Notes under the pieces: generated by a model
What the model was told of the DNA's origin: nothing
Database searches by the model: none
The model's input: the letters and a program-made list of their open reading frames with translations, nothing else
Shown: piece after piece, positions 51,944 to 60,935 of the stretch
Layout: each line of letters opens with the position of its first letter
Numbering within the stretch: position 1 is the stretch's first letter
Made by a program: the position numbers and the translations under genes
Sequence record: NC_070958.1
DNA length: 64,000 nt
Direction: 5' to 3' (one strand)

Positions 51944-51963
51944 GAGGGGTCTTCGGACCCCTC
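51944..51963 (+). terminator. Intrinsic terminator
   Basis: GAGGGGTC-TTCG-GACCCCTC followed by TTTATT. Confidence 0.85.
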
Positions 51964-53742: not shown

Positions 53743-54140
53743 TTACTCGTCAAACCTTTAAGAACTTGGATGCGGAACTTCCATCGCTTTCAAGCTTCTT
53801 TCTGGCAAACATTCCGTGTGCGGAAGTTAATGGATACTTGGTGATCCAAGCCAATGCTAGGAAGTTTCCCGAGAAACTGCTCATGCTGGCCAGGAAGTAT
53901 CCAGGAATCACGATCCAACACTGCAATGGTAAATTGTTGTTCGGTGGATCATTAGTGGGACCTGGTATCCCTGAAAGAACGGAGAAAAGAGACGGGACGT
54001 TTACGTTTCATATCTCCACCTACCCAGAACTTGCAACACCTAGATTCTGGGCGACACTTTCTATGCTTGCTCAAGCTCAACGTAAAACCTGGGTCACCGA
54101 GTTCACAAGCTACCTAAAACCTGTACAAAACAACTATTAA
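53739..54140 (+). CDS. Hypothetical protein
   Basis: GTGA-coupled; GAGGA RBS. Confidence 0.7.
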   Translation: MITRQTFKNLDAELPSLSSFFLANIPCAEVNGYLVIQANARKFPEKLLMLARKYPGITIQHCNGKLLFGGSLVGPGIPERTEKRDGTFTFHISTYPELATPRFWATLSMLAQAQRKTWVTEFTSYLKPVQNNY

Positions 54141-54150
54141 GGAAAAGATC

Positions 54151-55665
54151 ATGCAAAACACCAAAATGATGAGTGAGAACAAAGACTGGATCGTTTACAG
54201 CAACTACTGGCGCACCACCTCGCGGATCCTTGAACGTATGGGTGGCGAGTACACCAGCCAGGTTGAAATCAATCTGTCCGACGAGAACAACTCTGCCGAA
54301 GCTTTGGCAGAATTGCGTATTCGTCAACATACCACTCCACCGTCCCTCCGTGATGTGATCAGTCACTATTACGAAACTTCTGTCCACGACAAACTGGTTG
54401 AGCTGATCGGACCTGATAAAGCCTGGATCGCTGAGCACTGCAACATCCTCCCGTTCATTGACTGGCCGGAGTATAACCGGAAATGTAATGGTGGGGTCCC
54501 GTTGATCGAGTGTCTGAAAGAACTGGCGCCCCCGGTCCATGCGTACAGTGCGGTGAACGCGGTCAAGTTGAATACGTATCCGACTCGCGAACAGTTCTTC
54601 TACGACTTCGTTCTTGATGAATGGGATCGTGAGCTGGGGCACTTGGAGTTCATCTGCGGTTCCATCATTATGTATGCAGCCGCTTCCGCCAGGTTGTTCT
54701 TCATGTTCAATCCTTCCAGTGAGACATTCCATCTTTTCCTGAAGTGTCGTGACAGTGCTAACGGCAGTGCCCAGGTTATGATGAGTGCCGATTTGGAAGG
54801 TCTCAAGAAGTGGCATGAAAGTACTCGTGGGATGGTTAGCTCGTTCTTCCAGGATGACTACGAAGGGATCTATCCTGATACCGCCATTCTTCAAAAGGGG
54901 ATGACGGATGGGATCAACTACCTGATCTGGAAATACCTGGTCAAAGATGTGATCACTGAGAAACCCAAGGAGATCGAACGTCGTTGGATGATCACTGATC
55001 GCAAGGTAGCTCTCCAGCGTCTTGTGGGCTCCGTGTGTAAGAGTGTTCAACAATTCTACACACCGGACGGCACCCGTTACCGCCAGACCATCAACGAAGA
55101 CCAAATTACCACTTACGAGAAAACCGTGAAGACTGGTAAGGGTCTGGTCAGGACCGAAGTGAACACCCCGATCACTCACAAAGCGTATCTGGATATGTAT
55201 CACGCGCTTGACTGTCCTAAGCCGGTGAATAAGCTCCGTTATGAATACCATCACAAAGGCTATTGTTTTGATGTTGATGTTTACACCGACAACAAGATGA
55301 TCACCGCTGAGCTGGAGTTCAAAACAGTCAAGGAAGCGAAAGAGTTCCATAAGGTACCTGATTGGTTCGGTGAAGAGATCACTGATCTGGAAGGCGTCAG
55401 TAACTTCGACATCTTCAAAACGATCAATGAAAAGCCGAAGGTAACTCTGGAACAACTCACGATGCACATGAAAGGTCGTGAACTTCGTTTTGTTTACAAG
55501 AACTACCGTGGTGATGTAGCCACTCGCCGGGTATCTCGACCGTTCTCTATCAAGTTCGGGTCTAACGAGTATCACGAAGAAGAACAGTGGTTGTTGGAAG
55601 CGTGGGATCTTGACAAGAACCTCCCTCGTGTATTCGCAATGAAAGACATCATCGAGTTTAAATAA
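54151..55665 (+). CDS. Unknown N-terminal domain + CYTH (triphosphate tunnel) domain + C-terminal WYL domain
   Basis: CYTH: KEIERRW, RYRQT, TYEKTVKTGKGLVRTEVN, KLRY, DVDVY, AELEF, PDWFGEEIT..SN. WYL: LRFVYKNYRGDVATRRVSRP...WLLEAWDLDKNLPRVFAMKDI. Confidence 0.8.
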   Translation: MQNTKMMSENKDWIVYSNYWRTTSRILERMGGEYTSQVEINLSDENNSAEALAELRIRQHTTPPSLRDVISHYYETSVHDKLVELIGPDKAWIAEHCNILPFIDWPEYNRKCNGGVPLIECLKELAPPVHAYSAVNAVKLNTYPTREQFFYDFVLDEWDRELGHLEFICGSIIMYAAASARLFFMFNPSSETFHLFLKCRDSANGSAQVMMSADLEGLKKWHESTRGMVSSFFQDDYEGIYPDTAILQKGMTDGINYLIWKYLVKDVITEKPKEIERRWMITDRKVALQRLVGSVCKSVQQFYTPDGTRYRQTINEDQITTYEKTVKTGKGLVRTEVNTPITHKAYLDMYHALDCPKPVNKLRYEYHHKGYCFDVDVYTDNKMITAELEFKTVKEAKEFHKVPDWFGEEITDLEGVSNFDIFKTINEKPKVTLEQLTMHMKGRELRFVYKNYRGDVATRRVSRPFSIKFGSNEYHEEEQWLLEAWDLDKNLPRVFAMKDIIEFK

Positions 55666-55675
55666 GGAGTGCAGG

Positions 55676-56281
55676 ATGTTTAACCGTAAAGAAACCGCTG
55701 AAAAGATCATGGAGCGTCTTCGTTTGATCGTCGTTCCTGGTGGAGATATCTACGTGTACCCTGAAGAGATCGCCTACAAAGTAGGCTCTCATTTCTGTGG
55801 GAAGACCATCACCACCTTCTATTCGAGCGGGAAGGGTTTTCTTGAGTTACGGAAGAGAGTGCTCGAGTTAGCTAATATCGCGGAACAGCCACTGAAGGCT
55901 GTTCCCGTAATTCGGCTACTCGCTCTCAATGAAAAACACAAGGTTGTTTCCAATCCAATCGTCATTCATGATGCCGACACCCCGGAACAACTGTTCGACA
56001 GTTCTATCGCCGTGGCCTGTGCCGAAGCCAGGAAGTATGTTAATGCCAGGGGTGTGTTCGGACGAGTCTTCTTTGAAGAAGTAGAAGACTCGCTTTCCCT
56101 CTTCGCATTGAGCATGGTTCAACGGCGTGTTCCAGGGTTCTCGGTAGGACCCCGTCCCACCAACCCCGGTAAGTCGGTCACTCAGGCCGAGGTAATGTTC
56201 GCCATCGAAAAACTGAAACAGAAGGATGGTCGTGTATCTGCCAACCTTCTTCTCAATCACTTGTTTGGAGTACAGAAATGA
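55676..56281 (+). CDS. Hypothetical protein
   Basis: AAGGAG RBS. Confidence 0.75.
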   Translation: MFNRKETAEKIMERLRLIVVPGGDIYVYPEEIAYKVGSHFCGKTITTFYSSGKGFLELRKRVLELANIAEQPLKAVPVIRLLALNEKHKVVSNPIVIHDADTPEQLFDSSIAVACAEARKYVNARGVFGRVFFEEVEDSLSLFALSMVQRRVPGFSVGPRPTNPGKSVTQAEVMFAIEKLKQKDGRVSANLLLNHLFGVQK

Positions 56282-59049: not shown

Positions 59050-59790
59050 ATGAAAAAGATTATTATCGCCACACTGTTCTTCGTCCCGTTCTTCGGTAAT
59101 GCAGCTTCCTTTGACTGTCGCAAAGCGACCACTGTCATCGAGAAGACGATCTGCGAGGACGAAGTTGTCAGCAAGCTGGATGAAGAAGTCGCAAAAGTCT
59201 ACAAGGCGGTTCGTCAGGCTAATCCTGGTGATCAAGACATCATCAACCAACAACGTGACTGGATCAAGTCCCGCAACAAAGCCACCAGTGTTGTGGAACT
59301 GGAAGAGAAACACAGGGACCGCCTGGACGTTCTCAACATCATGCTGAAAGCCTCCAACGAACCCCAGGCTATGAAGCGTGACAACGCCGGTCCTGTTGCT
59401 ATGAAGCGTGGCGATGCTCCTGTGAAAACTCAGGAACAGAAAACCAAGCCGGTTAAGAAAGGCACCATTGCCGAATTGGATGACATGGCCAAGCAGGTTA
59501 GTGAGACTGGCTACTACGTTGACCCTAAAGGTATGAAGTTCGATGGTCGCACTCTGGGTGCAGGCATCAATGGTTTCCCTGGCTGGTGTGCTCAGCGTGT
59601 TAACCGCGTCACCGACACCCTGGTACTGCAAATGGTGAAGACCGATGAAGAACGTGCGGCATTCGTCAAACACAGTTCCATGTTCCGCATCGTAATGGGC
59701 AACATGATGTTGGAAAGCGCCAAGATGACTACCGAGAAAATGGGTGTTCCTTTTGACGCCAACAACTTCTGTTTCAATCTGGACGTATAA
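59050..59790 (+). CDS. Exported LprI/DUF1311-like (lysozyme-inhibitor-like) protein
   Basis: Signal peptide then AASFDCRKATTVIEKTIC...SKLDEEVAKVY...QQRDWIKSRN, the characteristic N-terminal LprI-family pattern. Confidence 0.75.
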   Translation: MKKIIIATLFFVPFFGNAASFDCRKATTVIEKTICEDEVVSKLDEEVAKVYKAVRQANPGDQDIINQQRDWIKSRNKATSVVELEEKHRDRLDVLNIMLKASNEPQAMKRDNAGPVAMKRGDAPVKTQEQKTKPVKKGTIAELDDMAKQVSETGYYVDPKGMKFDGRTLGAGINGFPGWCAQRVNRVTDTLVLQMVKTDEERAAFVKHSSMFRIVMGNMMLESAKMTTEKMGVPFDANNFCFNLDV

Positions 59791-60903: not shown

Positions 60904-60935
60904 AGCTAGAGCTACCCGCTTGGGTAGCTCTAGCT
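60904..60935. terminator. Bidirectional intrinsic terminator
   Basis: AGCTAGAGCTACCC/GGGTAGCTCTAGCT 14-bp stem between convergent genes. Confidence 0.85.

What the first reader, a model, noticed from the sequence alone, without database searches (positions are those of the whole stretch)
54151..55665. Three-domain fusion: unknown domain + CYTH + WYL
Seen: CYTH motifs (EIERRW, RYRQT, YEKTVKTGKGLVRTE, AELEF, PDWFGEEIT) immediately followed by a C-terminal WYL domain (FVYKNYRGDVATRRV...WLLEAWDLDKNLPRVF), with about 270 aa of unrecognised N-terminal sequence. Knowledge: CYTH enzymes bind or hydrolyse triphosphates (class IV adenylyl cyclase, RNA/thiamine triphosphatases); WYL domains sense nucleic-acid ligands and typically regulate defence loci (BrxR/CapW). 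Inference: a ligand-gated nucleotide or RNA-end processing enzyme, possibly countering nucleotide-signal-based defence or repairing RNA.
Basis: partly seen in the sequence, partly recalled or inferred. Interest (0 to 1): 0.68.

Follow-up and report, generated by a model that had tools for sequence, protein, structure and literature searches.

The report
Phage triphosphatase fused to WYL domain
One intact gene of Aeromonas jumbo phage D6 joins an unknown jumbo-phage domain, a triphosphate-cleaving CYTH enzyme (a hydrolase, not a cyclase) and a small WYL binding domain, a combination not described before whose substrate and role remain untested.

Summary
Window 54151-55665 (+) is a 504-aa ORF, gene D6_0177 of Aeromonas phage D6, deposited as "putative CYTH-like phosphatase". 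It has three modules, each a separate protein in other phages.

- Residues 6-271: a jumbo-phage-specific domain with no Pfam match and no convincing known fold.
- Residues 272-428: a CYTH domain of the NeuTTM/CthTTM kind. The family profile matches NeuTTM at E 1.5e-40, and all tunnel and metal residues are kept.
- Residues 441-504: a minimal WYL beta-barrel. The query itself is just under Pfam's cut-off, but relatives pass it, and the best structural matches are all WYL proteins (CapW, BrxR, PafBC, DriD).

The fusion is real. A syntenic homologue at about 35% identity has the same three parts. Two independent assemblies span the gene with no indel inside it. 29 of 32 listed substitutions fall on third codon positions.

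Three published sequence determinants mark the CYTH part as a hydrolase, not a class IV cyclase.

New here: the N-domain and the WYL domain are linked in three lineages, either fused or in neighbouring genes, and CYTH is present in only two of them.

The substrate, the WYL ligand and any anti-defence role are untested. I rate this a new architecture of known domains, of moderate interest.

The parts
54151..55665 (+). Complete CDS (504 aa plus stop), D6_0177, a three-module protein
   Evidence: Independent contigs span it with no indel inside the ORF, and 29 of 32 listed substitutions are at codon position 3.
54139..54143 (+). Shine-Dalgarno AAGGA, 7 nt upstream of the ATG. It overlaps the TAA stop (54138-54140) of the upstream gene.
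   Evidence: sequence read directly. Relatives start at the position of M7 (ATG 54169), so the true start could be 54166 or 54169.
54166..54963 (+). N-domain (residues 6-271), a jumbo-phage-specific family of unknown function. Sub-domain A covers about residues 1-133 and sub-domain B about 145-270.
   Evidence: phrog_30474. Family alignment A2 has invariant D12 and R25 and nearly invariant F14, Y19, W20, L27, R29, G31, G32, H72 and H96. AF2 pLDDT 84.9. No PDB match by Foldseek at E<=1e-3. VIA best Z 7.1, on residues 145-270 only. Relatives occur in jumbo phages pEt-SU, RisingSun and EL.
54964..55434 (+). CYTH / triphosphate tunnel metalloenzyme domain (residues 272-428), NeuTTM-like
   Evidence: phrog_6660 at E 3.5e-34. 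NeuTTM 2FBL at E 8e-5 for the single sequence and 1.5e-40 for the family profile. Invariant E274, E276, Q301, R309, K327, R334, E336, K361, R363, E387, E389. These are also kept in fused relatives.
55435..55470 (+). Linker (residues 429-440), a predicted short helix with lower confidence
   Evidence: helix at model residues 5-12, pLDDT 67-79.
55471..55662 (+). Minimal WYL domain (residues 441-504), an Sm-like five/six-stranded beta-barrel with no wHTH and no WCX
   Evidence: Pfam WYL 19.3 bits on the query; relatives 24-38 bits. PADLOC WYL at E 0.005. AF2 pLDDT 89.2. Foldseek top rows are PafBC, BrxR, CapW and DriD. VIA gives CapW Z 7.2, rmsd 2.5 A over 57 residues.
54103..55710 (-). 535-aa antisense ORF overlapping the whole gene; judged not coding
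   Evidence: One search lists it. The natural substitutions fall on its first codon positions (my arithmetic), which fits selection on the + frame only.

Best explanation
D6_0177 is one expressed-as-one polypeptide built from three modules.

Its catalytic core is a NeuTTM/CthTTM-type triphosphate tunnel metalloenzyme. It should remove the terminal phosphate of a triphosphate-bearing substrate by the two-metal mechanism of this family. E274, E276, E387 and E389 would hold the metals. R309, R311, K327, R334, K361 and R363 would line the tunnel. Y303 and K327 correspond to the Tyr28/Lys52 dyad of NeuTTM. It is a hydrolase, not a cyclase.

The flanking N-domain and mini-WYL barrel form a conserved pair of jumbo-phage modules, found fused or as neighbouring genes even where CYTH is absent. 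I infer that they supply targeting or gating, most likely by binding a nucleic acid or a nucleotide-like ligand.

My committed reading of the substrate is free triphosphates, meaning tripolyphosphate and/or (d)NTPs. This follows the characterised relatives and the nucleotide-metabolism context of the stand-alone phage CYTH genes. Activity would be tied to replication or repair intermediates through the WYL/N-domain pair.

Shown here: the domain identities, the intact catalytic residues, the real fusion and the conserved N-WYL linkage. Inferred: enzymatic activity, the substrate, and that WYL/N-domain regulate or target.
For: - CYTH identity: the family profile matches NeuTTM at E 1.5e-40 over the whole domain, and the catalytic and tunnel residues are invariant.
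- These residues are kept in all fused relatives.
- Hydrolase, not cyclase or ThTPase, by the HF, xRxR and ExE determinants (applied to the sequence).
- NeuTTM and CthTTM are PPPases/NTPases without cyclase activity, and the Tyr28/Lys52 dyad is documented (PMC3440374).
- WYL fold.
- The fusion is real: P0005 has the same three parts over its full length (36% identity by phmmer; 35% by BLASTP) in a syntenic locus.
- Contigs from two other studies span the gene with no indel inside the ORF, and substitutions fall on third codon positions.
- N-WYL linkage in three lineages. D6 and L009 are fused. L010 and L022 have [N+CYTH] followed by [X+WYL] one or two genes downstream. ACP1 and L024 have [N] followed by [X+WYL], and ACP1 has no CYTH in its genome.
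- Stand-alone CYTH genes lie beside tk (Aes012), and beside thyA with dhfr about 4 kb downstream (CF8).
- Iyer et al. 2021 proposed that jumbo-phage CYTH proteins are NTP-degrading triphosphatases.
- Stand-alone mini-WYL genes lie beside EndoVII, RNase H, exonuclease and DNA polymerase genes.
Against: - No activity data exist for any phage CYTH in the searched library.
- The query itself fails Pfam's CYTH model.
- The ExExK lysine is Arg278 in D6.
- The CYTH domain was not folded here.
- CapW's ssDNA-contact arginines appear not to be kept in the mini-WYL, so nucleic-acid binding is not assured.
- The N-domain has no recognisable fold, so its role is a guess.
- Two N-domain lineages (L023, L025) have no WYL within 4 kb.
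- All direct neighbours are unknowns, so the context of the D6 gene itself says little.
- A fused nucleic-acid-type handle would fit a polynucleotide 5'-end substrate as well as free triphosphates.
Confidence: 0.5

Rival explanations
1. Polynucleotide 5'-triphosphatase. The tunnel takes the 5'-ppp end of RNA (phage or host transcripts, primers) or DNA, held by the WYL barrel and the N-domain. This would convert ppp ends to pp or p ends for decay, ligation, repair or capping-like chemistry.
For: - TTM enzymes include the Cet1-type RNA triphosphatases.
- WYL domains of CapW, BrxR, DriD and PIF1 bind single-stranded nucleic acid.
- Mini-WYL genes sit in replication/recombination modules.
- N-domain sub-domain B weakly resembles PUR-alpha/Whirly and PARP WGR nucleic-acid binders, at Z 4-6.
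- A metagenomic relative fuses this CYTH type to a SAM methyltransferase (P0143).
Against: - The domain belongs with NeuTTM/CthTTM, not with Cet1-like enzymes.
- PF02940 (mRNA_triPase) gave no hit.
- The CapW ssDNA-contact arginines are not kept.
- The structural similarities of the N-domain lie in the range of chance arrangements (notes).
Confidence: 0.2
2. Counter-defence protein. The WYL barrel acts as a decoy or sensor for the ssDNA or nucleotide cue that de-represses host WYL regulators (CapW/BrxR), or the CYTH destroys a triphosphate-bearing immune nucleotide or its precursor.
For: - Host WYL repressors of CBASS and BREX sense ssDNA made during infection.
- Mini-WYL proteins are frequent in virulent phages: 405 phage records match.
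- The gene lies in a block of small unknown genes.
Against: - No anti-defence family hit; PADLOC gives only a weak WYL match.
- No literature link between CYTH and anti-defence was found.
- TTM enzymes cleave beta-gamma bonds of triphosphates, not cyclic oligonucleotides.
- The ssDNA-contact residues of CapW are not conserved.
Confidence: 0.1
3. Class IV (CyaB-like) nucleotide cyclase that makes cAMP or another cNMP to reprogram the Aeromonas host.
For: The founding CYTH cyclase CyaB comes from Aeromonas hydrophila, the host species. The Aes012 homologue is annotated 'similar to bacterial adenylate cyclase'.
Against: All three cyclase determinants fail: there is no HF motif, the first Arg of xRxR is kept, and the second Glu of ExE is kept. 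The profile search of PDB at E<=0.01 finds only NeuTTM and no AC-IV structure.
Confidence: 0.03
4. Artefact: two or three separate genes joined by a sequencing or assembly frameshift.
For: Each module exists as a separate gene in other phages.
Against: - The same 504-aa ORF is present in D3, D9 and LAh10.
- A homologue at about 35% identity has the same three parts.
- Contigs X3 and X5 from other studies span the gene with no indel inside the ORF.
- Third-position substitutions run along the whole length.
Confidence: 0.01

Closest known systems
NeuTTM (Nitrosomonas europaea NE1496, PDB 2FBL/3TYP) and CthTTM, bacterial CYTH tripolyphosphatases/NTPases
   Same: They share the whole-domain sequence family (profile E 1.5e-40). 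ExE on beta-1, RxR, K, RxE, KxR and ExE are all conserved, and the counterparts of the Tyr28/Lys52 dyad are present (Y303, K327).
   Different: The known enzymes are single-domain proteins of about 150 aa from bacteria. Here the domain sits between a 270-aa unknown domain and a WYL barrel in a phage protein. The ExExK lysine is Arg. The substrate is untested.
Stand-alone phage CYTH proteins (phrog_6660; e.g. Aes012_099, CF8_0187), noted by Iyer et al. 2021 as jumbo-phage triphosphatases
   Same: They are 35-40% identical over the CYTH domain and have the same invariant residues.
   Different: Those are single-domain proteins of 150-180 aa next to tk or thyA. D6 carries the fused form.
WYL domains of CapW, BrxR, PafBC and DriD (ssDNA-sensing transcription factors) and of Thermotoga elfii PIF1
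   Same: Same beta-barrel fold (VIA Z 5.6-7.2, rmsd 2.5-2.9 A over 57-58 residues). The sequence pattern is the same: Y...R.V.P....W[YL]L.A.D....R.F....I.
   Different: There is no wHTH and no WCX extension, so it is not a transcription factor. The motif reads WLL. The CapW ssDNA-contact residues S144, R164, R168 and R184 correspond to N, Q, a variable residue and D. There is an extra conserved loop with an invariant His (GSTExHPExQ).
Known enzymatic WYL fusions (Cas3, exoRNase, Mrr, HNH, SF1 helicase, AbiGII nucleotidyltransferase; Makarova et al. 2014)
   Same: The logic is the same: a WYL barrel attached to an enzyme that acts on nucleic acids or nucleotides.
   Different: A CYTH partner is not among the listed fusions. 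Known CYTH fusions (HD, Ppx, nucleotidyl kinase, CHAD) do not include WYL.

Membership tests
CYTH / triphosphate tunnel metalloenzyme (PF01928) | N-terminal ExExK motif on strand beta-1 | tested here: met
   E274-I-E276-R-R278. Both Glu are invariant in A3. The Lys position is Arg in D6 and in a few relatives (P0019, P0046).
CYTH / triphosphate tunnel metalloenzyme (PF01928) | Basic residues lining the tunnel, plus the C-terminal ExE metal site | tested here: met
   R309, K327, R334, K361, R363, E336, E387 and E389 are invariant and R311 is nearly invariant. They are also kept in P0005, P0007 and P0009.
CYTH / triphosphate tunnel metalloenzyme (PF01928) | Score above Pfam's gathering cut-off | tested here: not met
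   The query has no PF01928 hit at E<=1. Relatives P0030 (38.4 bits), P0140 (33.5) and P0017 (28.4) pass the 23.2 cut-off. The family profile hits NeuTTM at 1.5e-40, so membership holds through the family.
CYTH / triphosphate tunnel metalloenzyme (PF01928) | Eight-stranded beta-barrel or cleft fold | not tested
A two-domain alignment that would have let CYTH and WYL be folded in one job came out mis-aligned (A5).
CYTH / triphosphate tunnel metalloenzyme (PF01928) | Metal-dependent triphosphate hydrolysis | not testable with these tools
   Needs an enzyme assay.
Class IV adenylyl cyclase (CyaB/AC-IV) | HF motif four residues before ExExK (HFxxxxExExK) | tested here: not met
   D6 has I268-T269 at those positions (sequence; criterion from PMC8233210).
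Class IV adenylyl cyclase (CyaB/AC-IV) | Second Glu of ExE replaced by Ala, and first Arg of xRxR replaced by a small residue | tested here: not met
   E389 and R309 are both kept.
Thiamine triphosphatase | Aromatic W/Y before RxR (W/YxRxR) | tested here: not met
   T308 precedes R309-Y-R311.
WYL domain (PF13280) | Score above Pfam's gathering cut-off | tested here: inconclusive
   The query scores 19.3 bits against the 21.8 cut-off. Family members score 38.2 (P0096), 29.7 (P0069), 24.2 (P0048), 24.0 (P0107) and 21.8 (P0070).
WYL domain (PF13280) | [quoted passage not shown] | tested here: met
   AF2 pLDDT 89.2. Foldseek ranks 1-22 are all WYL proteins at probability 1.00. The VIA top seven are all WYL, Z 5.6-7.2.
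WYL domain (PF13280) | Conserved basic residues of the ligand groove, as in the CapW ssDNA contacts S144, R164, R168 and R184 | tested here: not met
   From the alignment plus the WLL=WHV motif match, these map to N451, Q479, E483 and D499. The family has other invariant basic or polar residues (R459, H475, K489, R493). The mapping is tentative because there is no residue-level structural alignment.
WYL transcription factors (CapW/BrxR/PafBC/DriD) | N-terminal wHTH and C-terminal WCX domains around the WYL | tested here: not met
   No HTH or WCX is present. The protein ends 4 residues after the barrel.

The most novel reading that the evidence does not exclude
The N-domain and the mini-WYL barrel are the two halves of a so far undescribed jumbo-phage sensing or targeting module. 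The very common stand-alone phage mini-WYL proteins would bind the same kind of infection cue (ssDNA or a nucleotide derivative) that host WYL regulators use. In D6 this module would steer a triphosphatase to that cue or to a triphosphate-bearing immune or replication intermediate, making it a phage counter-measure or a replication-coupled nucleotide control of a new type.
Probability: 0.12. Interest if true: 0.8.

Novelty: new variant of a known kind. Interest (0 to 1): 0.45.

Why it matters
CYTH enzymes are ancient, and their physiological substrates are mostly unknown. Phage copies have only been guessed to clean nucleotide pools. A natural fusion to a WYL barrel, whose solved relatives (CapW, BrxR, DriD) are known to sense ssDNA, gives a concrete handle. 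It predicts that the enzyme's activity or location depends on a nucleic-acid-like ligand, and that can be tested with simple assays.

The work also exposes two phage families with no assigned function that deserve study in their own right. One is a mini-WYL protein present in hundreds of phage genomes, often beside EndoVII and DNA polymerase. The other is a jumbo-phage N-domain that travels with it.

If mini-WYL proteins bind the same cues as host WYL defence regulators, they would bear on how phages and hosts compete over infection signals.

Tried and rejected
- **Mixed alignments (A1, A5).** MAFFT stretched single-domain proteins across the query. I discarded these alignments, so neither the full-length protein nor CYTH+WYL was folded.
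- **The search for homologous proteins.** The full-length search found only the protein's own cluster, the N-domain search found nothing, and CYTH found three hits. The exhaustive search was therefore needed.
- **The search for related loci on viral contigs.** N-domain: none. CYTH: none. WYL: one locus.
- **N-domain fold searches.** Foldseek against PDB found nothing at E<=1e-3. VIA wide and the VIA second look gave Z<=7.1, only on residues 135-270, and only generic alpha/beta arrangements.
- **Protein Atlas.** No usable hit.
- **NCBIfam.** Nothing.
- **The genome search 'own'.** No genome is held for this window, so I used record handles instead.
- **Complex prediction.** The P0007+P0015 pair was sent eight times and the machine was busy each time, so there is no result and no verdict on binding.
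- **N-terminal parts of the [X+WYL] neighbours.** I tested whether they are degenerate CYTH domains. They are not (hhalign probability <1%).
- **P0137 (511 aa) and P0070 (464 aa).** Both carry a C-terminal WYL. P0137 shows no CYTH by hhalign. P0070 matches the query only over the linker and WYL (BLASTP) and has no CYTH hit with the A3 profile.
- **Literature.** No paper on the function of a phage CYTH or a phage mini-WYL was found.
- **RNA evidence.** There is only one 173-nt contig in a wastewater metatranscriptome, which is not proof of transcription.
Full report
**What is there.**
- Window 54151-55665 (+) holds a 504-aa ORF. A good Shine-Dalgarno sequence (AAGGA, 54139-54143) lies 7 nt before the ATG.
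- The window is identical to Aeromonas phage D6 (MN131137.2, genus Ludhianavirus, 260 kb). Window position equals record position minus 124000.
- The ORF is D6_0177, deposited as "putative CYTH-like phosphatase". The enzyme part was therefore already annotated. The other two parts were not.

**Three modules.**
- PHROGs split the protein into 6-117 (phrog_30474), 273-428 (phrog_6660) and 429-503 (phrog_3715), all of unknown function.
- An exhaustive phmmer search found 3233 proteins at E<=1e-3.
  - 70 WYL only
  - 59 CYTH only
  - 17 N-domain only
  - 2 tandem WYL
  - 2 N+CYTH
  - 2 N+CYTH+WYL (the D6 cluster and P0005)
- Each module is thus an independent evolutionary unit, and the three-part form is rare.

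**Is the fusion real?** Yes.
- D3, D9 and LAh10 carry the same ORF at 99% or more.
- P0005 (506 aa) matches the query from end to end, at 36% identity by phmmer and 35% by BLASTP. It lies in a contig whose flanking genes are homologous to D6_0176, 0178, 0179 and 0180.
- Contigs from two other studies (X3, 73 kb; X5) span 53900-55899 in one piece, with 42 and 59 substitutions and no indel inside the ORF. The only indel is an extra A behind 54142, which is intergenic.
- Of the 32 listed substitutions inside the ORF, 29 are at third codon positions along the whole length (my count). That shows purifying selection on one continuous frame.
- The same substitutions fall on first codon positions of the 535-aa antisense ORF (54103-55710), so that ORF is not coding.

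**CYTH domain (272-428).**
- Pfam misses it on the query. The query does hit NeuTTM (2FBL/3TYP) at E 8e-5. The 43-sequence family profile hits NeuTTM at E 1.5e-40 over the entire domain and hits nothing else in the PDB at E<=0.01.
- Relatives pass the PF01928 cut-off.
- Invariant columns are E274, E276, Q301, R309, K327, R334, E336, K361, R363, E387 and E389. R311 and Y303 are nearly invariant.
- The fused relatives keep them all.
- Vogt et al. 2021 give three sequence determinants that separate class IV cyclases and thiamine triphosphatases from TTM hydrolases (PMC8233210):
  - An HF motif four residues before ExExK. D6 has I268-T269, so it is absent.
  - The residue before RxR, and the first Arg. 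D6 has T308 and keeps R309, so it is neither a ThTPase nor a cyclase.
  - The second Glu of ExE. D6 keeps E389, whereas cyclases have Ala.
- NeuTTM and CthTTM are tripolyphosphatases/NTPases without cyclase activity. NeuTTM's proposed Tyr28/Lys52 dyad (PMC3440374) corresponds to Y303 and K327.
- One deviation: the Lys of ExExK is Arg278.
- Conclusion: this is a catalytically intact TTM-type triphosphohydrolase. Activity itself is inferred.

**C-terminal domain (441-504).**
- The query scores 19.3 bits on Pfam WYL against a cut-off of 21.8. PADLOC's WYL model gives E 0.005.
- Family members reach 38.2, 29.7, 24.2, 24.0 and 21.8 bits at the same profile positions.
- The consensus F.Y.NYRGE...R.V.P..I.FGSTE.HPE.QWLL.A.DLDK...R.FA.KDI follows the WYL pattern, with WLL in place of WYL.
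- The AF2 model (34 sequences, pLDDT 89.2) is a small beta-barrel.
- Foldseek's first 22 ranks are PafBC, BrxR, CapW and DriD at probability 1.00 and TM about 0.6-0.66.
- An independent all-against-representatives search puts CapW (Z 7.2, 2.5 A over 57 residues), BrxR, PafBC and DriD in the first seven rows.
- It is a WYL domain, but a bare one, with no wHTH and no WCX, so it is not a transcription factor.
- CapW contacts ssDNA through S144, R164, R168 and R184 (PMC11662680). From the HMM alignment and the WLL=WHV motif match, these correspond to N451, Q479, E483 and D499.
- The family instead has its own invariant Y449, N451, R459, H475, Q479, D486 and R493, and nearly invariant K489.
- The ligand may therefore differ from the ssDNA bound by CapW. 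This mapping is tentative.

**N-domain (6-271).**
- There is no Pfam or NCBIfam hit.
- Alignment A2 shows a well conserved first half, with D12 and R25 invariant and F14, Y19, W20, L27, R29, G31, G32, H72 and H96 nearly so. The second half is variable.
- The AF2 model is confident (pLDDT 84.9, pTM 0.81). It has a beta-rich sub-domain (about 1-133) and a helix / four-strand sheet / two-helix sub-domain (145-270).
- Foldseek finds no PDB match at E<=1e-3. VIA finds only generic matches with Z of 7.1 or less to the second sub-domain, including PUR-alpha/Whirly-like and PARP WGR folds at Z 4-6.
- In BFVD its relatives are uncharacterised proteins of the jumbo phages pEt-SU, RisingSun and EL.
- The function is unknown. 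The first sub-domain could not be searched alone.

**Linkage between the modules (new).**
- In L010 (P0007) the gene after [N+CYTH] encodes a 237-aa protein whose C-terminus is the mini-WYL. It is 97% identical to P0015.
- In L022 (P0009) the equivalent gene is two genes downstream.
- In phage ACP1 the stand-alone N-domain gene is followed directly by a 175-aa protein ending in the mini-WYL, and the genome has no CYTH. L024 is a close relative of ACP1 with the same order.
- Together with the fused D6/L009 form, this makes three lineages in which N and WYL travel together, with CYTH present in two of them.
- Two other N-domain lineages (L023, L025) have no WYL within 4 kb.
- The non-WYL parts of the neighbour proteins are not CYTH.
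- I could not test physical binding. The ACP1 pair was not eligible, and the P0007+P0015 job never reached the machine.

**Context.**
- The gene sits in a tightly packed + strand array. The array runs from a strong hairpin terminator at 51944-51963 to a terminator-like hairpin, scored on the - strand, at 60904-60935.
- It lies about 3 kb from the RNR beta gene and about 9.5 kb before a thymidylate-synthase-like gene.
- The neighbours have no Pfam, PHROG or PADLOC hits.
- Stand-alone CYTH relatives lie next to tk (Aes012), and next to thyA with dhfr about 4 kb downstream (CF8).
- Stand-alone mini-WYL genes lie between EndoVII and a DNA polymerase/exonuclease gene in Vequintavirinae, and after HNH and exonuclease genes in Gordonclarkvirinae.
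- Iyer et al. 2021 noted CYTH and MazG triphosphatases scattered in jumbo phages and proposed NTP degradation.
- CYTH is not among the enzymatic WYL fusions listed by Makarova et al. 2014. WYL is not among the known CYTH fusions.

**Verdict.**
The domains and the fusion are right, and the enzyme is a hydrolase rather than a cyclase. "Ligand-gated" is plausible, and the anti-defence or RNA-repair role is unsupported.
- The best reading is a NeuTTM-like triphosphohydrolase whose targeting or regulation comes from a conserved N-domain/mini-WYL pair. I take free triphosphates (PPPi, (d)NTPs) as the most likely substrate class, and a polynucleotide 5'-ppp end as the main rival.
- This is a new architecture of known domains, with one unknown domain. 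It is of moderate interest, mainly because it offers a testable handle on phage CYTH enzymes and exposes a widespread, unstudied phage mini-WYL family.
The reads call used 2001 bases.
- Earlier scan notes near this place concern other genes and did not affect this reading.

Noticed in passing
L002:2459-2680, L003:2444-2695, L004:2396-2695, L008:1956-2183: The mini-WYL domain is a stand-alone protein of 70-100 aa in hundreds of phage genomes (405 records at E<=1e-3). In Vequintavirinae it lies between EndoVII and a DNA polymerase/exonuclease gene. It has no annotated function (phrog_3715, 'unknown function').
   Followed up: partly
P0143 (metagenomic protein, 422 aa): An N-terminal CYTH domain of this same family (residues 1-157) is fused to a SAM-dependent methyltransferase domain (residues 194-327). 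This resembles the triphosphatase plus methyltransferase pairing of capping enzymes.
   Followed up: no
P0013 (139 aa), P0025 (167 aa): These proteins consist of two tandem mini-WYL barrels. This fits the idea that WYL barrels work as oligomers.
   Followed up: no
P0070 (464 aa), P0137 (511 aa): Larger proteins with the same mini-WYL at the C-terminus, preceded by a D6-like linker. Their N-terminal 390-440 residues have no Pfam hit and no CYTH hit.
   Followed up: partly
window 54103-55710 (-): A 535-aa open frame lies antisense to the whole gene. Natural substitutions fall on its first codon positions, so it is most likely a by-product of the codon usage of the + frame.
   Followed up: yes
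window 51944-51963 and 60904-60935: Two strong GC-rich hairpin terminator-like sites (8 and 14 pairs) bracket the + strand array of about 14 small unknown genes that contains the finding. The first hairpin scores on both strands.
   Followed up: no
L020 (phage CF8 record 172280-172702): In CF8 only the first ~120-145 positions of the N-domain match. The first match contained one TAG stop. This may be a truncated or broken copy, and it lies 10 kb from that phage's stand-alone CYTH gene.
   Followed up: no
window 59050-59790 (+): A 246-aa ORF with a signal-peptide-like N-terminus. The gene at the syntenic position in L009 (10574-11404; its homology to this ORF was not tested) has a weak LprI (PF07007) hit. 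This may be a secreted or periplasmic phage protein.
   Followed up: no
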